Shown here piece after piece: positions 1,636 to 51,200 of a stretch of DNA of 64,000 nucleotides (within the stretch, counting starts at the first letter, position 1; every line of letters starts with the position of its first letter). Origin of the DNA: Octopus sinensis (lineage: Eukaryota); the NCBI RefSeq assembly GCF_006345805.1, contig NC_043008.1:56606001-56670000 (forward strand), in the 5' to 3' direction. The translations under genes were made by a program, and so were the position numbers. The notes beneath the pieces are model-generated. The model did not search any database. It was not told the origin of the DNA and worked only from the letters and a program-made list of their open reading frames with translations.

Positions 1636-1974
1636 TGTGCACGATATCGTTTTGTTGAATCTGACAATGATAGGAATTAATATCATCTTTATGGTTATTG
1701 CTATCGATTTGTTGTTGATATTAATGAGATATTTATATATTTAGAGTTGCTAATTCAGATGCTTTTAATGCCGAAGATGGTCGAAAATTTAGACAAAAAC
1801 AAGCAAACAAAAAACATCGCAAAAAAAAGAATACGTAAAAAAATAAAGGAAAAAAAAGGAAAATACAGGAAACAGAAAAAAAATTGTAATGTTCATAATG
1901 ATGAAGATATCGCTTGAAGGAAATGATGGAAAAAAAATAATATTAGTGATATAGATAATGATCGAGAGAGGATG

Positions 1975-2021
1975 ACGAAGATGATGATGTTGACGATGAT
2001 GATGACGACGACGACGACGAC

Positions 2022-2062
<41 letters not shown>

Positions 2063-2193
2063 CGCTACTGTTGATGATGATGCCTGTGGTGATAGATGTG
2101 GGGATAATAAAAATACTACTGCTGATGATGATGATGATGGTGATGATGACAGTGACGACGACGATGATGACGAGGCCATGATGATGTTGTTGT

Positions 2194-2229
<36 letters not shown>

Positions 2230-2357
2230 CGCTACTGTTGATGATGATGCTGTGGTGATAGATGTGGGGATAATAAAAAATACGACTGAGATGATGATGA
2301 TGTGATGATGACAGTGACGACGACGATGATGACGAGGCCATGATGATGATGTTGTTG

Positions 2358-2396
<39 letters not shown>

Positions 2397-2524
2397 CGCT
2401 ACTGTTGATGATGATGCCTGTGGTGATAGATGTGGGGATAATAAAAATACTACTGCTGATGATGATGATGGTGATGATGACAGTGACGACGACGATGATG
2501 ACGAGGCCATGATGATGTTGTTGT

Positions 2525-2557
<33 letters not shown>

Positions 2558-2990
2558 CGATGATGATGATGACGCTACTGTTGATGGTGCTGCCTGTGGT
2601 GATAGATGTGGTGATAATAATAATGCTGCTGATGATGATGACAATGACGACGACGGTGATGACGAAGCTATGATGATGTTGATGATCATGGTGATGATGA
2701 TGATGATGATGAGGATGATGATGATGATGTGACGATGCTGCTGCTACTACCATGTGGTGGTTGTGGTGGTGATGACAATGATGATGATGACAATGACGAC
2801 GATGGTGATGACGAAGCTATGATGATGTGGATGATCATGGTGATGATGATGATGATGATGATGAGGATGATGATGATGATGTGACGGTGATGCTGCTACT
2901 ACCATGTGGTGGTTGTGGTGGTGATGACAATGATGATGATGACAATGACGAAGACGACGACGGAGATGATGACGATGGTGAAGAAGATGA
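1975..2990 (+). repeat. (GAT)n-derived higher-order minisatellite
   Basis: The marker GACGCTACTG recurs at 2061, 2228, 2395 and 2571. A second unit with about a 149-bp period recurs at 2684 and 2833. Confidence 0.9.
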
Positions 2991-3336
2991 CGTCAGCAAA
3001 ACCGACGTCGACGACGTAATGGTGAAACAACACGTAAAGTTGCTGATCATGACAGGAGTGGTGATCCCGATGGTTGTCATTCGCTGCTAGATTTAGTTGG
3101 GAAAACGGCGGTAGCTATTGTTGTTTAGCAACCACCAGTCCCCTAATGAATGTTTTGGATGATTCTCCCGATCACAGGTCAACATTATCTGGAGAGAATG
3201 GCATCTATTGGAAACGAACCCGTAAATGATGGATCTTTGGCATGAATGATAATGTTCGAAGATTAGAGTTCGCCCACGGATTGGAAAGAGTGGTCCGATT
3301 GTGATATAGAAGGTGCTTGGAACTAAGATGGCGAAT

Positions 3337-6145: not shown

Positions 6146-6461
6146 TTTTATTTATTTATGCACCCTTTTCAAGCCTAGCCAGGCTCATGGGCCCGGTTTC
6201 CTGGTTTCTATGGCGTATGTGTTCCCCGCAACTGGACGGGACGCCAGTCCATCGCAGCGTAACTCAAGAAACGGGAAGAAAGAGTGAGAGAAAGTTAGGG
6301 CGACAGAGTACAACAGGGGTCGCCACCACTCCCTGCCGGAGCCTCGTGAAGCTTTAGGTGTTTTCGCTCAATAAACACACACAACGCCCGGTCTGGCAAT
6401 CGAAACGGTCATTCTCCGACCGTGAGTCCGCTGCCCTAACCACTGGGCCATTGCGCCTCCA
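6146..6461 (-). mobile_element. tRNA-head + middle Z + tail Y SINE with a 13-bp TSD
   Basis: TGTCAAAAGCGAT at 6133-6145 and TGTCAAAAGTGAT at 6462-6474. Confidence 0.9.
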
Positions 6462-17384: not shown

Positions 17385-17820
17385 TTAGCGTGACGTCATC
17401 AACGTTTTGACCAATCGTTTCGTTAGGTGGCTTTAGTCAAGTAGAACGGGACGTCATCATTATTTTGACCAATCGCTGCATTATAACTGCCTCTTGTTGG
17501 TTTTCCTGTTTTGACCAGTCGCTTCGTTAGTCAAGTAGAACGGGACGTCATCATTATTTTGACCAATCGCTGCATTATAACTGCCTCTTGTTTTTTCCTG
17601 TCCTGACCAGTCGCTTCGTTAGTCAAGCAGAACGGGACGTCATGCAGATTCTGCCCAATCACGACTTATAGCTACATTAGATCTGCCCCCTGTCTGTACT
17701 TGTTAGGTGACTATTCAAGCAGAAAAGGACGTCATCAATATTCTGACTAATGACGTGTCCTGTTTGTATCCTGTCCATTCTAGCTGAGCTAGACGTCATC
17801 AACTTGTTGACCAATCAGAT
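17385..17820 (+). repeat. About 93-bp tandem repeat with six GACGTCA...CCAAT-type modules
   Basis: Units start at 17433, 17527 and 17619, with degenerate modules on both flanks. Confidence 0.85.
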
Positions 17821-23855: not shown

Positions 23856-23912
23856 TATGCATACATACACACATATATACGTGTATGTATGTATATGTAT
23901 GTGTAGAGTATA

Positions 23913-25524
23913 CAGTGGCGGCCAAAATGTTCAGAACGGCATTGTTTTCGTCAGAAAAGTAGATATAATTTTTTATCAAAGTTGTTTTATATTCTATAAT
24001 TTTCACAGACAATAAATACGATATTATTTGTTATTGCCTGAGATTGTGGTGTAATTTGAGAGGATAATACAAAAGTTATGGATAATTTAGTGATTTACTG
24101 CAAAACCCATAGCGGCCAAAATTATCAGAACGGTTGCTTTTACTCCGTGTTTTAGTATATTTAATCGGCGAACTCTAATTTTTTGAATTTGTTTACGTGG
24201 CGGTTCGTTTACTAAACATTAGTAAGAATATTTGCAGTGTACTTTGTTAATATAATGCCACTTACTCCGTTACCAATTCGTCAGCAGATTATTAAGCTTC
24301 GAAGGAAGGATAATTGAAGTATTGGATCTATTGCAAATATTGTTAACAAGTCAAAAGTGTTGTACGCGGTATTCTTAAGGTCTACGATGATTGTGGTTCG
24401 TGTGAAGCAAGAAAGTTTACAGGTAGGCCAAGAAAAATGACCAAGAGAGAAGATCGTGCTATGGTAAAGTTGGTTAAAAAGGACAGATTTAAAACTGCTG
24501 CTACTGTTTCTTGGAAAATGAGCATTCTTTTGAAGAAAACTTTATCTCGAAAAACTGTGTCTCGTTGTTTAGTTGATCATGACCTACAAGCAAGAGCACC
24601 TGCAGTGAAGCCATTGATCAGCTCCAAGAATAAAAAGTGTCGTCTTACCTTTGCAACCAAACATGTATTGTGGTCTCAAGAAAAATGGCAAACGGTGCAT
24701 TTCAGTGATGAATCTAAGTTTATGTTATTTGGCTCAGATGGGAAAAGATACATTCGTAGAAAAGTAGGTGAAAAATTGTCGCCTAAATGCCTTAAGACTA
24801 GTGTTAAATTCGGTGGAGGAAGTGTCATGGTTTGGGGGATGATATCTGGAGATGGTCTGGGCCCTTTGGTGAGATTACATGTAAAGGTAAATGCAGGAGT
24901 TTATAAACAACTTGTAAAAGATCATGTCTTGCCTGTGCTGAGAAATTCAACTAAGCGACCACCCATATTCATGCAGGACAATGCCCCATGTCACAAGGCT
25001 AAGGTGGTCATGAACTTACTCAATGCTGAAAAGGTTATTGTTATGGATTGGCCTGCTCAAAGCCCAGATCTCAATCCTATTGAAAATGTATTGAATATTC
25101 TAGGAGAACGTTCGAAAGCCAGAAATCCTAAAACAACTGAGCAATTATGGAATGCCCTTCAGGAAGAATGGAATAAGATCACCCATCAAGAAATCGAAAA
25201 TTCAATTTCCTCATGCAGTCAAAGATGTCAGAGTGTGATTGAAGCTAAAGGGCTTCACACTAAATATTAAATAATTCCAGTATTCTCTGTCATTTTTGAT
25301 TATTTTGTTATTTTTTCAACCGTTCTGATCATTTTGCAGTAAATCACTAAATCATCCATAACTTTTGTATTATCCTCTCAAATTACACCAAAATCTTAGA
25401 CAATAACAATTAATATTGTATTTATTGTCTGTGAAAATTATAGAATATAAAACGACTTTGATAAAAACTTATACTAACTTTTCTGACGAAAACAATGCCG
25501 TTCTGAACATTTTGGCCGCAACTG
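23913..25524 (+). mobile_element. Tc1-family DNA transposon (IR/DR type), full length, 1612 bp
   Basis: Left TIR 23913-24136 starts TA|CAGTGGCGGCCAAAATGTTCAGAACGG. Right TIR 25317-25524 is its reverse complement. The inner direct repeat GCGGCCAAAATTATCAGAACGG mirrors the outer one. Left flank is TA; right flank reads TT. Confidence 0.97.
24255..25270 (+). pseudogene. Tc1 DD34E transposase with two N-terminal lesions
   Basis: The 24437-25270 ORF has FSDESKF, FMQDNAPCH and SPDLNPIE, with 34 residues between D2 and E. The likely true ATG is at 24255 (MPLTPLPIRQQIIKL). There is an in-frame TGA at 24315-24317 and a 1-bp frameshift in the A-run at 24353-24356, after which the frame reads SVVRGILKVY...GRPRKMTKREDR. 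Confidence 0.93.
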
Positions 25525-25615
25525 TTGATTACATATAAATAAATGGTGTTGCTGGTGCTGATAGTGGTTAGACGAAGAGAAAAGCTGGAGAGACTGAAAT
25601 AAGAAGAGGGAAAAT

Positions 25616-26310: not shown

Positions 26311-26460
26311 ATAAAGTACTCCTCAACCGGAATGAGGCCCGGGGGGATGGGATCCCAGGGTCACAATGTGTGTTCGAGATGCTCCCTGAGTTCTGCAATT
26401 CTCATCGATTCACGGTGATGGCTGCGCAGTTCATCGACGGACGAGCCGAATGATTCTCCG

Positions 26461-26502
<42 letters not shown>

Positions 26503-27734: not shown

Positions 27735-28350
27735 CCTTTCCTTTCTACTATAGGTACAAGGCCTGAAACTTTGAAGGAGGGAACAGTCAATTAATTCGAC
27801 CCTAACGTATAATTGTACTTAATTTAGCAGCCCCGAAAGGATGAAAGGCAAAAATCGACCTCAGCGGAATTTGAACTCAGAACGCAAAGACCGACGAAAT
27901 GCTGCCAACCATTTTGCCCAGCGTGCAAATGATTCTTACAGCTCGCCACCTAAAATAATCATAATAATAAACCTTTCTACTCTAGGCACAAGGTCTGGAT
28001 TTTTTATGGGGAGGGGGACAGTTGATCACATCGACTCCAGTACTTGGCAGGTACTTAATTTATCAAGTCCGTAACGATGAAAGACAAAGTCGACCTCGGA
28101 GGTATTTGAACTCAAAACGTAAAGGCGGACGAAAATACCTATTTCTTTACTACCCACAGGGGCTAAACACAGAGAGGACAAACAAGGACAGACACACGGA
28201 TTAAGTCGATTATATCGACCCCAGTGCGTAACTGGTACTTATATAATCGACCCCGAAAGGATGAAAGGCAAAGTCGACCTCGGCGGAATTTGAACTCAGA
28301 ACGTAGCGGCGGACGAAATACCGCTAAGCATTTTGCCCGACATGCTGACG
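27735..28350 (-). mobile_element. Tandem array of three family A SINE units (tails A2, A2, A1)
   Basis: Cores at about 27830, 28075 and 28250. The A1 tail is fused directly to the internal GGTATTTTCGTC of the next unit at about 28140. Confidence 0.82.
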
Positions 28351-30344: not shown

Positions 30345-31461
30345 CTGGAACTACATACACACACACACACACATATATATATACAAATATAAATGCATAC
30401 GTGTATATATTAACATGTATGCATGCATATATATGCACACACGTATACACACACACATATATATATATATATACTTATGCAACTATATATACGAGTATGC
30501 ATGTGTGCAGAGACGCGTATATACACACGCCTCACACATCACACACTCATACACACACTCACGCACGCACTTGTGTGCACACACAAACACACACACACAA
30601 ATATGGGCTTAAGTACGTGTGTAGTTGGAAATGTGCTGGATGTTGCGGAGTATGTGAGAATCGAACCAACGCTTTAGAGTTAATGCTCTTTCATATTAAC
30701 AGTATAGTTCGCTACATGATCAAATATATTATTAGACATTTGTCCAGTCATCTGAATTAGATAATCGAATAAATAAACACAATAAATATTTAACATTAGG
30801 TTTGATCCAAAATTCATTTCTAATCTACAGGTAAACATATATTTGGAATACTACATACTCGCACTCATAAATACTAATGGCTTCATGCATCTATATATAC
30901 GTAAGTGAAGGCTCCTGGTTCAATGCTTTGGGATAGAAATGAACCCATTGACCTGGTGGAAGGTCATACCAATCCGGTCTCACGATAATCGTCGATGCGG
31001 AATCAGTGAGCGCAATATTCTAAGCAAACTTGCACAATCAATATGGCGGTTTTATATCTTTGCTTCTAGCTCTACATATGACGTCACTGAAGGTTTCACT
31101 GGTCTTTAAGTATTCAAGCGTAAAATAAGAACGGGAATTCTATCGAGCGACAACTAGTTATTGCAGTTTGGTTCCTGTTGTTCTTAAGATAGAAATCCTT
31201 TGAAGATGTTTAACATTTCAAGTTGCTGCAGGTCCAAAAGTGGCTTAGTTGTAAAACTGTAAAGCATTTCAATGTATGTAGAAACACGAGCACGTATACG
31301 TTACACACACATGGATATTATATACTTGTATACAGGTATGAATACAAATTATATATTTGTATTCAGGTATGTCTACATATTTGTATACAGGTATGCGTAC
31401 AAATTTGTATATGTGTACATATTTGTATATATACATGTGTGTGTGTGTATACATACACATG

Positions 31462-31747
31462 TGGAGGCGCAATTGGTCCATTGGTTTGGGCAGCGGACAT
31501 GCGGTCGGAGGATCGCGGTTTCGATTCCCAGACCGGGCGTTGTTTGTGTTTATTGAGCGAAAACACGTAAAATCCTCCACGAGACTCCGGCAGGGGGTGG
31601 TGGCGACCCCTGTTGTACTCTTTCGCCACAACTTTCCCTCACTCTCTCTTCCTGTTTCTTGTGTAACGGTGCGATGGTCCGGCGTCCACATACGCCACAG
31701 AAACCGGGAAACCGGACCCATGTGCCTGGTTAGGCTTGAAAAGGGCG
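31462..31747 (+). mobile_element. tRNA-head + middle Z + tail Y SINE
   Basis: Homologous to 6146-6461. Confidence 0.88.
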
Positions 31748-31805: not shown

Positions 31806-32112
31806 GTATGTATATATCACGTTATCCCTTCATCGACTAGCCTATTGGATGTTATACATCGCTGGTCACAAGGCACTAACTCAATGAACAGAAATAGTAA
31901 ATAAAAGCACACACACACACATACATGCATGGATATATAAATGATGTGGTTTGCGCAACAACAAGGCGCAGCCAGTCTGCGAATCGTAACCACTATCTAA
32001 CGACTGTAACACACGATTAAGACCTAGACCAAACACTTTCATATACATTAACGCACACACAAATTGTTAAGATGGCTTATTCGCAATTTATAACCAAAAA
32101 GCCACAATTATA

Positions 32113-32288
32113 GACGTCACTAAGGTAACTAGGAGTAAGAGTAACTGATGAGGATTAATCAAATCCGAAATCATCGATGATCTAGCTCTGCCTCCCTTGT
32201 CAGTCATTACCGTGACTAAGAGTTGTTCTGACTCTTATTTCTAGCAATGATGGTGCTTAATATCAGCCTTAGTCACCTTAGTGACGTC
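32113..32288 (+). mobile_element. 176-bp TIR-bounded element carrying a hammerhead ribozyme
   Basis: 19-bp inverted repeats GACGTCACTAAGGT(A/G)ACTA at 32113-32131 and 32270-32288 (1 mismatch), with TA immediately outside both ends. Confidence 0.75.
32132..32195 (+). ncRNA. Type I hammerhead ribozyme with intact core and extended stem I
   Basis: CTGATGA at 32145-32151; stem II GGATT/AATCC with loop AATCA; GAAA at 32167-32170; stem III ATCA/TGAT with palindromic loop TCGA; AUC cleavage after 32182. Stem I is GGAG-TA-AGAG-TAA paired with TAG-CTCT-GC-CTCC. Confidence 0.85.
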
Positions 32289-34328
32289 TACACACCACAC
32301 GCACACATACTCGTTCACACACACACACTCACACGTATTTAATCGCAATAAACTCAGGTCATTATTAGGTGCCTTATTTTACACTATCCTTTCGTGTAGA
32401 TCTTTCGAAAAATATCCTCAGCTTCATGAGTAATACGAGTTAGATAATGATCCTGTCTACTATGCACATAAAGCCTGAAAATTTGGGAGAGGGGACTAGT
32501 CGATAACGATCCTAGATATAACTGATACATAAATTATTTACTCCGAGATGATAAAAAGCGAAGTCGACCTCTGAGAGATATGATCACAGAACGTCAAAAC
32601 GGGATAAATGCCGTTAAGTAACTTGTCCATTGTGCTAGCGATACAGCTAACTCGCTGCTTTAGAATCAATAATAAGAAAGAGGCAGTGAAATTACAAACA
32701 TATACTGTCGGATAAAATAGTTAGCCATATTCCTTCCGTATCTTTAAGTTCTGTGTTCCATTTCCAGTGAGGTTGACTGTGTCTTTTATTCCATCGGTCT
32801 CTATAAAATAAAATACCTGTGAAGTAAATAGAATTGCCCTCTTCCTTCAAAATTGCTGGCTTGTGTTCAAATCTGAAACCATTTAAAGAAGCAAGGCGGC
32901 AGAATCCTTACCGCACCGGAAAAAAAAATCTCCATGTCATTTCTACCATTCTTTGCAATCTGAGTTCATATCCTGCCTTGACTGTCGTCAAGTCAAAATC
33001 GCTGGGACTTGTGCCAAAGTTAGAAAGGATATTATAGCTAAAAGGCTGGAATTTAATATAAATCGCTTTAGCTCTCTGGATTTCAATACGAAATAAGGAT
33101 ATTAGATTTACTTCTGTAAACCTTCCAAAGGGGGTTTACTTATTTCTTTTTGTTTTATTATATGTGTTAATGATAAACTTTATTGTAATGCTACTAATAA
33201 CTATATTAATAATAGTATTAATAACATTATTATAAATATCAGTTTCCCGATTATTACTAACAATAAAACAATTTCTTTTGCCAACCACGAAGTTTTGAGA
33301 GCACAAACGCATCAACACCGGTTGACAAGTGGTGTGGAATGTGACGAGCATAGACGCAGAATCATTCACAAGGCTATAGTAGAAGACGCTTGCCTAAGAC
33401 GTAGCGGAGGGAAACCGAACCAACACCAAGTGGTTATAAAGCAGAGTATAATTAGCGTTTGATATATGTAGACATTTTCGCAAATATTTGTTGGATGACT
33501 ACTCTCCTTGACTCTAATATAGAAGTAGATACTCCCTAATAAGGAAGTAAATATATTAGCGGGTTCCTTATGATGATCACTAGCATACATGATGTTTCAT
33601 TGTTATAGCTTCCACTACGCTAGGAAAAAAATATAGAATCCTTTAGAAACGAACAGATTTTAAATTAATTTAATATTTACTAAACAATATTCATCACTGT
33701 TTCGATGTGTTTTCATGCAGCCATAGTGTGCGCTGTTAGTTCTGGTATCTCTCCATCGTCTGTGTTGTACATCTCTGAAGTTTCTGTCTACTTTCATTAC
33801 ACTGTACAACAAATTTCAGGGTCAAGAACAAAACATAGTTCTCATGTAGATTTTATTATGAAGTTGATTATGTTAAATTCGAATTTTATAACAAAAATTT
33901 CCCATCACATCACATTTTCTTGTAAATTACCGACTTAATACCTATGCAATTTATACAATCTATTGTAATTAATTCATAAATATATTATGAATCGCCATGT
34001 TTGTTCGCATTATATAATGTATTAACTTACATTTTAGTATTTCCTATGTTTATAAAATGTCTCAGGTGTGTCACACTTCAGGTTCTAGCAGAAGTCAGCC
34101 AGCATAGCTGGGCTCTATTAATGTAATGAAATACTATCTAACTAATAAACATAGTCTGTGTTCTTGTGCGTATGAATATGTATTGATAGATATTGTGTAT
34201 ATAAACACACACACACACAGAGTCGTCATTTTATATTTTTAATTCCGTGCATGCGCTTTGTTTTTTATTTTGTCAACTACACAGTATAGTAGGGTCATTT
34301 GGGCACCGTCTGTGAGAAAAACAGAACC

Positions 34329-41519: not shown

Positions 41520-41731
41520 CAGGGTGTCCCAAAAATATGTATGCATACTTTAACTGTTTTTGCACTTCAACTGCATTTTCACACTTCCAGTATCATTTTA
41601 GAATGAATTTTCTTTGTTCAAAGCTTAATCTGACTGCCATCATTAAATCCTATAGGTTTCATCTGGAAAGAAAAAATATCAAATGAGTTATAAGCTGCTA
41701 AAGTGTGTATACATTTTTTTGGGACACCCTG
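41520..41731. mobile_element. Tc1/mariner-type MITE, 212 bp
   Basis: About 33-bp TIRs (CAGGGTGTCCCAAAAA..TGTAT.CA.ACTTTA) with TA on both flanks and no coding capacity. Confidence 0.9.
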
Positions 41732-41837
41732 TATATATTTGCCGATATCATCTGAGATGACTAGCGGGTTGCACAGCCAAACTAAGTAACTACTATACTG
41801 CATGATAATGTATATGGATATATATATATATGTATGG

Positions 41838-50473: not shown

Positions 50474-50474
<1 letters not shown>

Positions 50475-50592
50475 TAAATGTAATATGTGACAATTTTTCT
50501 GTAGACATGATAAAACTCCGAGTTTCGGATGCCGAGGGGGAAACTCAGAGTTTTATCATGGCTACCGAATAATTGTCACATATTACATTTAC
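50474..50592. repeat. 119-bp near-perfect inverted repeat
   Basis: 53-bp arms (50474-50526 and 50540-50592) with 4 mismatches and a 13-nt loop. Confidence 0.92.
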
Positions 50593-50790: not shown

Positions 50791-50861
<71 letters not shown>

Positions 50862-50867
50862 TATAAG

Positions 50868-51200
50868 TGGAGACGCAGTGGCCCAGTGGTTAAGGCAGCT
50901 ATTTGCGGTCATAGATTCGCGATATTGATTCCCAGACCGGACGTTGTCAGTGTTTATTGCGCGAAAGCACCAAAATCTCCACGAAGCTCTAACAGGGCTG
51001 GTGGCGAATCCTGCTGTACCCTTTCACCACAACTTTTTCATACTATCTCTTCCTGTTTCTGCTGTACCTGTATTTCAAAGGGTCCTTCTTGTCACACTGA
51101 ATTTCCCCGAGAACTACGTTAAGGGTACACGTGTCTGTGGAGTGCTCAGCCACTTGCACGTTAATTTCACGAGCAGGCTGTTCCATTGATCGGGTCAACT
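50868..51200 (+). mobile_element. tRNA-head + middle Z + tail W SINE
   Basis: Matches 31462 up to CTCTTCCTGTTTCT and then diverges completely. The right boundary is approximate. Confidence 0.72.

What the first reader, a model, noticed from the sequence alone, without database searches (positions are those of the whole stretch)
32113..32288. Complete hammerhead ribozyme packaged in a TIR-bounded, TA-flanked mini-element
Seen: every catalytic core residue is present (CUGAUGA, GAAA, AUC). Stem II has 5 bp; stem III has 4 bp inside a perfect 12-nt palindrome (ATCATCGATGAT); stem I extends over 13 positions with a 2x2 internal loop (one A-A mismatch at position 2). The motif sits within 19-bp terminal inverted repeats with TA outside each end. 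The 3' half has extra hairpins (AGTCA/TGACT, TAAGAGT/ACTCTTA). Established: animal type I hammerheads are known from Penelope pLTRs and from tandem non-LTR retrozymes, and stem I internal loops dock on loop II. Inference: a DNA-transposon-like (MITE) architecture carrying a self-cleaving RNA fits neither class. It may be an undescribed mobile ribozyme family, or a structured RNA closed by a terminal stem. I cannot tell whether it has been reported.
Basis: partly seen in the sequence, partly recalled or inferred. Interest (0 to 1): 0.88.

Follow-up and report, generated by a model that had tools for sequence, protein, structure and literature searches.

The report
Lone hammerhead ribozyme motif, inverted-repeat flanked
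A single 176-base unit in this animal-type genome carries a complete self-cutting hammerhead RNA motif between two matching inverted ends; it looks most like a stray copy of the small ribozyme-bearing repeats already known from animals, and no second copy could be found to show it is a new kind of mobile element.

Summary
These are a type I hammerhead with an intact core, a 5-bp helix II, a 12-nt palindromic helix III, and a 13-position helix I with a 2x2 loop and one A-A mismatch. The unit also has 19-nt inverted ends and TA outside each. It is the only descriptor hit in the window, and about 1e-4 such hits are expected per window by chance.

The MITE reading is not established. The element is single-copy in the window, and no relative turned up in any collection I could reach. 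The TA dinucleotides simply extend the palindrome, so they are not evidence of a target duplication. The unit's boundaries are defined only by the inverted repeat itself.

Size, low GC and strong self-pairing match published non-LTR retrozyme units, and solitary monomers of those are documented. The weak palindromic helix III is a known trait of metazoan type I hammerheads. Predicted energies say the monomer misfolds and that helix III forms only between two copies, so a lone copy should cleave poorly.

Rfam does not recognise the motif. I favour a solo retrozyme-like copy (0.40). The rivals are a chance motif (0.28) and a true hammerhead-bearing MITE (0.22). A search of the source genome would decide between them.

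The parts
32111..32112 (.). TA dinucleotide outside the left inverted-repeat arm. It extends the palindrome, so it is ambiguous as a target-site duplication.
32113..32131 (+). Left inverted-repeat arm GACGTCACTAAGGTAACTA, made of two ~9-nt sub-repeats (GTCACTAAG / GTAACTAGG).
32132..32144 (+). Hammerhead helix I, 5' strand (GGAGTAAGAGTAA). It also has an alternative partner at 32231-32244.
   Evidence: (I4)
32145..32151 (+). Catalytic core C3-A9 (CUGAUGA).
32152..32166 (+). Helix II hairpin GGATT-AATCA-AATCC, with a G10.1-C11.1 closing pair.
32167..32170 (+). Core G12 A13 A14 A15.1 (GAAA).
32170..32181 (+). Helix III, a 12-nt perfect palindrome ATCATCGATGAT. The hairpin alone is -0.3 kcal/mol; the duplex between two copies is -15.5 kcal/mol.
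32182..32183 (+). C17 and N1.1. The predicted self-cleavage is between 32182 and 32183 (triplet AUC).
   Evidence: inference from the hammerhead numbering
32183..32195 (+). Hammerhead helix I, 3' strand (TAGCTCTGCCTCC).
32202..32216 (+). Hairpin AGTCAT-TACC-GTGACT. It contains an internal copy of the terminal GTGACTAAG sub-repeat.
   Evidence: (I2)
32217..32237 (+). Hairpin TAAGAGT-TGTTCTG-ACTCTTA.
32270..32288 (-). Right inverted-repeat arm (reverse complement GACGTCACTAAGGTGACTA).
32289..32290 (.). TA dinucleotide outside the right arm.

Best explanation
The unit is a solitary, probably dead-end copy of a small non-coding, strongly self-paired repeat that carries a metazoan-type (type I) hammerhead ribozyme. 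It is the kind of unit known as a non-LTR retrozyme or Penelope-associated hammerhead repeat.

How it would work:
- When transcribed on the + strand, the hammerhead would cut between 32182 and 32183.
- Its helix III is too weak to hold the active fold in one molecule. The nascent RNA instead pairs the CUGAUGA core with the UCAUC strand of helix III.
- The 12-nt palindromic helix III lets two copies pair into a double hammerhead. The copies could sit in tandem on one transcript or meet in trans. This is the way many animal type I hammerheads work.
- The 'terminal inverted repeat' is then the long closing helix of the compact RNA fold, not a transposase site.
- With only one cleavage site and no partner nearby, this copy could at most nick a read-through transcript inefficiently. 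It cannot release a circle.

What is shown: the sequence anatomy, the energies and the single-copy state in the window. What is inferred: the family origin, the need for dimerisation, and that the inverted repeat acts at the RNA level.
For: - The core and all three helices are complete, and this is the only hit in the window. Chance expectation is about 1e-4 per window.
- Helix III is palindromic and weak, as PMC4209133 describes for canonical metazoan type I hammerheads. That paper also reports a conserved G10.1-C11.1 pair and palindromic 15.2-16.2 positions, both present here.
- Helix I runs 7 positions to its internal loop and helix II is 5 bp. That is the published 6/4 geometry lengthened by one on each side.
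- The active monomer fold is -11.4 kcal/mol against an inactive MFE of -16.3. The dimer is -43.5 against 2 x -16.3, with a 12-bp intermolecular helix III.
- The helix III hairpin alone is -0.3, the duplex is -15.5, and the nascent trap hairpin is -7.3 kcal/mol.
- The unit is 176 nt, 41.5% GC and 64-66% paired, with fold z-scores of -5.7 (+ strand) and -6.6 (- strand). Published retrozyme units are 170-400 nt, below 50% GC and highly self-paired (PMC7229834).
- Solitary monomers of retrozyme families are spread evenly over chromosomes in Xenopus (bioRxiv 10.64898/2026.07.22.740005). Most min-hammerheads are dispersed single motifs (PMC4209133).
- The unit abuts a CA-type microsatellite. Penelope-like elements show an insertion bias for microsatellites (bioRxiv 10.1101/2021.04.23.441226). 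This is weak support, because microsatellites are everywhere in the window.
Against: - No tandem partner and no second copy were found anywhere I could search. Family membership is therefore untested.
- No reverse-transcriptase or GIY-YIG ORF lies nearby.
- A retro-copy has no reason to end exactly at the two arms of a helix. A perfect 16-nt terminal palindrome with sub-repeats is the classic look of a DNA transposon.
- The - strand folds slightly better than the + strand, which gives no sign of RNA-strand-specific selection.
- Rfam Hammerhead_1 does not report the motif even at E<=10. A control hammerhead scores 16.5 bits.
- The motif deviates from the common consensus by U15.2-A16.2 and by the A-A mismatch at 1.2/2.2.
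Confidence: 0.4

Rival explanations
1. The hammerhead resemblance is a chance motif inside an ordinary small inverted-repeat element (a plain MITE or fold-back unit). No ribozyme lineage or activity is involved.
For: - My null predicts a few equally good motifs per 2-3 Gb genome, and the finding was picked out by a scan.
- The unit is rich in self-complementary GAT/ATC words (GATGA, GGATT, AATCC, ATCATC, GATGAT), so stems come cheaply.
- No Rfam hammerhead model reports it even at E<=10, while a control reaches 16.5 bits.
- There is an A-A mismatch next to the core, and U15.2-A16.2 replaces the usual C-G.
- The monomer MFE is an inactive fold.
- TA-flanked MITEs do exist in this window, for example at 41520-41735.
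Against: - All 13 core positions are exact. G10.1-C11.1 is present, and the helix I/II lengths keep the canonical register.
- Helix III is a perfect 12-nt palindrome, as in dimer-type animal hammerheads.
- Inverted-repeat units cover only about 1% of the window. A chance motif inside one is expected well under once per genome.
- CTGATGA is not enriched in this sequence.
Confidence: 0.28
2. One reading: a true MITE. This would be a non-autonomous DNA transposon moved by a TA-targeting (Tc1/mariner-like) transposase, with a functional type I hammerhead as cargo.
For: - The terminal inverted repeats are 19 nt with one mismatch, and perfect over 16 nt with the TA.
- TA lies on both sides.
- The ~9-nt sub-repeats (GTSACTAAG) occur twice in each end and once internally (I2, I6), like transposase-binding sites.
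- The size is typical of MITEs.
- The genome carries Tc1-like transposons and a TA-flanked MITE.
Against: - There is only one copy and no empty site. No autonomous partner with these ends exists in the window.
- The Tc1 element here ends in CAGTGGCGGCC, which is unrelated.
- The TA is part of the palindrome, so it does not count as a duplication.
- A hammerhead that needs a second copy to fold fits tandem retro-repeats better than dispersed cut-and-paste elements.
- No hammerhead-carrying MITE appeared in the literature searches. I read this as absence of report, not proof.
Confidence: 0.22
3. A stand-alone host RNA feature: a structured non-coding RNA closed by the 20-bp terminal stem, or a cis-acting hammerhead within an intron or UTR of a host transcript. 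It would not be mobile at all.
For: - The fold is strong, with z-scores of -5.7 and -6.6.
- Intronic and UTR hammerheads exist in vertebrates (HH9, HH10, Clec2; from my own knowledge).
Against: - No Rfam family matches.
- Both strands fold equally well, as expected from a DNA-level inverted repeat.
- The unit lies between SINE-like repeats and microsatellites, with no recognisable gene nearby.
- Conservation could not be tested.
Confidence: 0.07

Closest known systems
Metazoan non-LTR retrozymes (Cervera & de la Pena 2020, PMC7229834; Li et al. 2026 preprint)
   Same: Both carry a type I hammerhead. The unit size (176 nt against 170-400 nt), GC below 50% and highly self-paired RNA all match. 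Solitary monomers of such families are known to be scattered in genomes.
   Different: There is no tandem array here. The unit is bounded by a near-perfect inverted repeat with TA on each side, which is not a described feature of retrozymes. No relative is available for alignment, and expression or circularity is unknown.
Dimer-dependent animal type I hammerheads (newt satellite 2, Schistosoma Sm-alpha, Penelope-like element pLTR min-hammerheads; PMC4209133)
   Same: Helix III is weak and palindromic, so the active fold needs two copies. The G10.1-C11.1 pair and palindromic 15.2-16.2 positions are shared.
   Different: Helix III is longer here (a 12-nt palindrome) than the usual 1-2 bp plus a 2-4-nt loop. 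Helix II is 5 bp, not the 7-8 bp of PLE min-hammerheads, and it lacks their bulged base after A9. No PLE ORF or pLTR is nearby.
Tc1/mariner-derived MITEs (Stowaway-like, TA target)
   Same: It is a short non-coding unit with terminal inverted repeats, TA on both sides and sub-terminal repeats. A clear example lies in the same window at 41520-41735.
   Different: Multi-copy status, empty sites and an autonomous partner are all unshown. The ends are unrelated to the Tc1 element in the window. No MITE is reported to carry a hammerhead.
Rfam Hammerhead_1 (RF00163)
   Same: The core sequence and helix topology (open helix I) are the same.
   Different: It is not reported even at E<=10, against a gathering score of 34 bits. 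It deviates at 15.2-16.2 (U-A) and at 1.2-2.2 (A-A).

Membership tests
Hammerhead ribozyme, type I | Conserved core: C3 U4 G5 A6 N7 G8 A9, G12 A13 A14, A15.1-U16.1, H17 | tested here: met
   CTGATGA at 32145-51, GAAA at 32167-70, U at 32181 and C at 32182.
Hammerhead ribozyme, type I | Three helices around the core, with helix I open and helices II and III capped | tested here: met
   Helix II is 5 bp. Helix III is 4 bp including 15.1-16.1. Helix I has 10 pairs in 13 positions.
Hammerhead ribozyme, type I | Reaches the Rfam RF00163 gathering score (34 bits) | tested here: not met
   There is no hammerhead hit at gathering threshold or at E<=10. A control phage hammerhead also fails the threshold, at 16.5 bits, so the model is insensitive to such variants.
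Hammerhead ribozyme, type I | The active fold is thermodynamically accessible | tested here: inconclusive
   The active monomer fold is -11.4 against an inactive MFE of -16.3 kcal/mol. A double-hammerhead dimer is favoured, at -43.5 against -32.6.
Hammerhead ribozyme, type I | Site-specific self-cleavage in Mg2+ | not testable with these tools
   This needs in vitro transcription.
Hammerhead ribozyme, type I | Covariation in helices I-III across family members | not testable with these tools
   No second copy could be retrieved.
Metazoan non-LTR retrozyme | Type I hammerhead within a 150-450 bp unit with GC below 50% | tested here: met
   The unit is 176 bp at 41.5% GC. Criteria are from PMC7229834.
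Metazoan non-LTR retrozyme | Head-to-tail tandem repeats (dimers to multimers) | tested here: not met
   There is one copy only. No tandem repeat overlaps it. Monomeric derivatives of such families are, however, described (bioRxiv 10.64898/2026.07.22.740005).
Metazoan non-LTR retrozyme | Highly self-paired predicted (circular) RNA | tested here: met
   About 64% of bases are paired when folded as a circle and 66% when linear. The z-score is -5.7.
Metazoan non-LTR retrozyme | Expressed as linear and circular RNA | not testable with these tools
   No transcript data are available.
Metazoan non-LTR retrozyme | Sequence relatedness to a retrozyme family or PLE pLTR in the same genome | not testable with these tools
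   The source genome is not held by any tool. Window ORFs are not on record.
MITE (Tc1/mariner-type) | Terminal inverted repeats at the exact ends | tested here: inconclusive
   The inverted repeat is real, but the 'ends' are defined only by the repeat itself. No independent boundary is available.
MITE (Tc1/mariner-type) | TA target-site duplication | tested here: inconclusive
   TA is present on both sides but is self-complementary, so it cannot be told apart from a longer palindrome.
MITE (Tc1/mariner-type) | Multiple dispersed copies with constant ends, and empty sites | tested here: inconclusive
   None is in the 64-kb window or in 84 kb of a related assembly. The whole genome is not searchable here.
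MITE (Tc1/mariner-type) | Autonomous element sharing the inverted-repeat ends | tested here: not met
   The only transposase-bearing element in the window (23912-25525) has unrelated ends, TACAGTGGCGGCC. The ends occur nowhere else in the window.
Penelope-like element pLTR hammerhead | Lies in a repeat flanking an RT / GIY-YIG ORF | tested here: not met
   No such ORF lies within +/-5 kb, and no long ORF other than low-complexity ones.

The most novel reading that the evidence does not exclude
The unit is one member of an undescribed family of TA-targeting miniature DNA transposons whose cargo is a working type I hammerhead. That would be the first case of a self-cleaving ribozyme spread by cut-and-paste transposition rather than by retro-elements or RNA circles.
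Probability: 0.2. Interest if true: 0.75.

Novelty: new member of a known kind. Interest (0 to 1): 0.4.

Why it matters
Type I hammerheads are already known by the thousand in animal genomes, in tandem retrozymes and in Penelope-like elements. One more copy is therefore not surprising in itself.

Two things would make it worth a follow-up. First, the literature held here reports no hammerhead or retrozyme family from cephalopod-like genomes. Second, if genome-wide copies keep the same inverted ends with fresh TA duplications, the hammerhead would be linked to DNA transposition for the first time. That would widen the known ways ribozymes spread. Both questions are settled by a routine BLAST of the source genome, so the finding is cheap to resolve.

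Tried and rejected
- **Rfam.** I ran the whole window at gathering threshold, then 801 nt and 176 nt at E<=10. No hammerhead family was reported. The weak SCARNA7 and CPEB3 hits are low-complexity or chance matches. Control searches on phage hammerheads show the type I model is insensitive, reaching only 16.5 bits against a gathering score of 34.
- **Copies in the window.** Exact and 3-mismatch pattern searches, blastn at word size 7 with two scoring schemes, and nhmmer --max all found only self matches and microsatellite noise.
- **Public DNA collections.**
  - The metagenome scan for CTGATGAGGATT..AATCCGAAA gave 27 loci. None shows similarity to the element beyond the searched helix II/core pattern, and most look like phage-type hammerheads just upstream of a start codon.
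  - The viral scans (ends, hammerhead) and the prokaryote-genome scan gave nothing.
- **Protein route to hidden copies.**
  - The 41-aa open frame found no candidates in the word-indexed search.
  - In the full HMMER search its only hit was a false positive on a 4191-aa repeat adhesin.
  - A six-frame concatenation of the element gave no hits.
- **Sampling related genome sequence through the Tc1 transposase.**
  - Relatives lie on long ENA contigs of ERZ21867824.
  - Four loci totalling 84 kb were fetched.
  - They share only the Tc1 element with the window and hold no copy of the unit.
  - They are probably from another species, so I stopped.
- **Finding the window's own contig.** Four window ORFs were looked up and none is on record.
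- **Link to the neighbouring Tc1 element.** I rejected the idea that the unit is a deletion derivative of it, because the ends are unrelated.
- **Larger element.** I rejected an 11-nt direct repeat (32077 / 32339) as evidence for a larger retroposon. Such a match is expected by chance at roughly 0.1-0.3 for this search space.
- **GAT microsatellite origin.** I checked whether GAT microsatellites inflate the core motif. They do not.

Full report
**What is there.**
- On the + strand, CTGATGA (32145-51) is followed by a 5-bp hairpin, GGATT-AATCA-AATCC.
- GAAA (32167-70) comes next, then the perfect 12-nt palindrome ATCATCGATGAT (32170-81), and then C (32182).
- The 13 bases before the core (32132-44) pair with the 13 after the C (32183-95) at 10 positions. 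There is an A-A mismatch at the second position and a 2x2 internal loop at positions 8-9.
- This is a complete type I hammerhead with predicted cleavage between 32182 and 32183.
- The unit is closed by GACGTCACTAAGGT[A/G]ACTA in inverted orientation (32113-31 and 32270-88), with TA outside each arm.
- Each arm is built from two ~9-nt sub-repeats, and a further copy lies inside the unit (I2 and I6).

**Is it more than chance?**
- My own descriptor asks for an exact CUGAUGA, helix II of at least 3 bp, GAAA, helix III of at least 3 pairs including A15.1-U16.1, and UH. It finds exactly one hit on both strands of the window, and it is this one.
- In 52 Mb of first-order Markov sequence with the window's composition, relaxed hits occur at 0.26 per window and none is as good as this. 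Multiplying the observed marginal frequencies gives roughly 1e-4 per window.
- That is small for one window but still means a few such motifs per 2-3 Gb genome. A scan that reads many windows could therefore meet a chance example.
- CTGATGA is not enriched by the GAT microsatellites of this sequence: 9 seen against 9.3 expected.
- Only four non-low-complexity perfect inverted-repeat pairs (arm at least 14 nt, within 400 bp) exist in the whole window, covering about 1% of it. The hammerhead lying inside one of them argues that motif and inverted repeat belong together.

**Rfam.**
- No hammerhead model reports the motif at the gathering score, nor at E<=10 when only 801 or 176 bases are searched.
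- As a control I searched phage-type hammerheads recovered from metagenomes that share the same helix II. In an equal 176-base search, one of them reaches only 16.5 bits with Hammerhead_1 (gathering score 34) and 27.6 bits with RAGATH-1-hammerhead (gathering score 56.3).
- The library is therefore insensitive to such variants, but the present motif still scores lower than the control.
- The likely reasons are U15.2-A16.2 in place of the usual C-G, and the A-A mismatch beside the core.
- I count this as mild evidence against the motif, not as a refutation.

**How it would work.**
- As a 64-nt domain, the active fold is worth -11.4 kcal/mol. The minimum-energy fold (-16.3) instead pairs the UGAUGA of the core with the UCAUCG strand of helix III. 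The same mispairing appears in the fold of the whole unit.
- The helix III hairpin alone is marginal (-0.3 kcal/mol). The trap hairpin that forms first during transcription is -7.3.
- Two copies together fold into a double hammerhead at -43.5 kcal/mol, against -32.6 for two separate monomers. The intermolecular helix III is 12 bp and worth -15.5 on its own.
- This is the behaviour described for canonical animal type I hammerheads. In PMC4209133, helix I of about 6 bp and helix II of about 4 bp interact, while a short palindromic helix III prevents monomer cleavage and allows an active dimer in tandem repeats.
- Here helix I runs 7 positions to its internal loop and helix II is 5 bp, which is the same register lengthened by one.
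- I infer that a solitary copy would cleave poorly.

I think that goes too far.
- Animal non-LTR retrozyme units are 170-400 nt, below 50% GC and highly self-paired (PMC7229834, PMC7761336).
- Monomeric derivatives of retrozyme families are scattered evenly over Xenopus chromosomes (bioRxiv 10.64898/2026.07.22.740005).
- Most min-hammerheads are dispersed single motifs (PMC4209133).
- The present unit is 176 nt, 41.5% GC and 64-66% paired, with fold z-scores of -5.7 and -6.6.
- On that view, the inverted repeat is simply the longest helix of a compact RNA.

Against this view:
- A retro-copy has no reason to end exactly at the two arms of a helix.
- The sub-repeated ends look like transposase-binding sites.
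- A clear TA-flanked mariner-type MITE lies in the same window (41520-41735).
- The - strand folds at least as well as the + strand.

The TA dinucleotides cannot decide the matter. TA is self-complementary, so it merely lengthens the palindrome to TAGACGTC...GACGTCTA. The boundaries of the 'element' are known only from the inverted repeat itself.

**Search for relatives.** The decisive test is whether a family exists and how its copies end. I could not carry it out.
- The unit is unique in the window, and its flanks match only microsatellites. The SINE-like repeats on either side do not include it.
- A metagenome scan for the helix II/core pattern returned 27 loci. None shows similarity to the unit beyond that pattern, and most look like phage-type hammerheads.
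- Viral and prokaryote scans returned nothing.
- Translations of the unit found no called ORF in the protein collections. The one hit, a 4191-aa repeat adhesin, is a false positive.
- The Tc1-like transposase at 24437-25270 has about 80% identical relatives on long contigs of ENA assembly ERZ21867824. The 84 kb fetched around four of them share only that transposon with the window and hold no copy of the unit.
- The source organism is therefore unidentified.
- All these negatives are weak, because no tool here holds the source genome.

**Verdict.**
- I favour a solitary, probably inactive copy of a retrozyme-like, dimer-dependent hammerhead repeat (0.40).
- A chance motif in an ordinary inverted-repeat unit comes next (0.28).
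- A genuine hammerhead-bearing MITE follows (0.22).
- A stand-alone host RNA is least likely (0.07).
- As it stands, this is a new member of a known kind. Literature searches found no report of hammerheads in cephalopods or in MITEs. That makes the MITE reading interesting if a genome-wide search supports it.

Noticed in passing
window 23912-25525: A Tc1/mariner-type transposon with 194-nt terminal inverted repeats (94% complementary) ending TA|CAGTGGCGGCC. It carries a 277-aa ORF (24437-25270) whose relatives are 338-342 aa with HTH_Tnp_Tc3_2 and DDE_3 domains, so this copy is short at the N-terminus. Copies about 85% identical lie on long contigs of ENA assembly ERZ21867824.
   Followed up: partly
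window 26316-26469 (-): An orphan 5.8S rRNA-like stretch (53.7 bits, above the Rfam gathering score of 42) with no SSU or LSU rRNA beside it. It sits between (TA)n and (CA)n runs. It may be a pseudogene, a retro-copy or a 5.8S-derived repeat.
   Followed up: no
window 41520-41735: A clear TA-flanked miniature inverted-repeat element with ends CAGGGTGTCCCAAAAA (mariner-type). It shows that such elements are present in this genome.
   Followed up: partly
window 50474-50592: A 119-bp fold-back unit with 22-nt perfect inverted ends (GTAAATGTAATATGTGACAATT) and an internal hairpin.
   Followed up: no
window 31408-31747 and 32519-32662: SINE-like repeats bracket the hammerhead unit. Copies of the first lie at 6163-6461 (-) and 50812-51066 (+). 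Copies of the second lie near 28229, 10173, 40776 and 3341. Neither family includes the hammerhead unit.
   Followed up: partly
window 1971-2992: A roughly 1-kb (GAT)n array with a 152-bp higher-order period. The window as a whole has 137 tandem-repeat rows and is 34% GC.
   Followed up: no
window 17433-17694: A tandem repeat with a 92-94-bp period (2.3-2.8 copies, up to 95% matches), of unknown nature.
   Followed up: no
L023 101-124 and 318-341 (metagenome contig TARA_R100000773_G_scaffold5003_2); also L003, L016, L017, L024: These look like phage-type hammerheads with the same helix II (GGATT/AATCC) as the window motif but no other similarity. In L023 two of them lie 217 nt apart, each just upstream of a ribosome-binding site and an ATG. 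Rfam Hammerhead_1 gives one only 16.5 bits, below its gathering score.
   Followed up: partly
P0001 (4191 aa): The only 'hit' of the 41-aa translated query in the representative library is a giant repeat adhesin. Its score is summed over many weak repeat matches, with no single matched stretch. It is a false positive worth remembering for short queries.
   Followed up: yes
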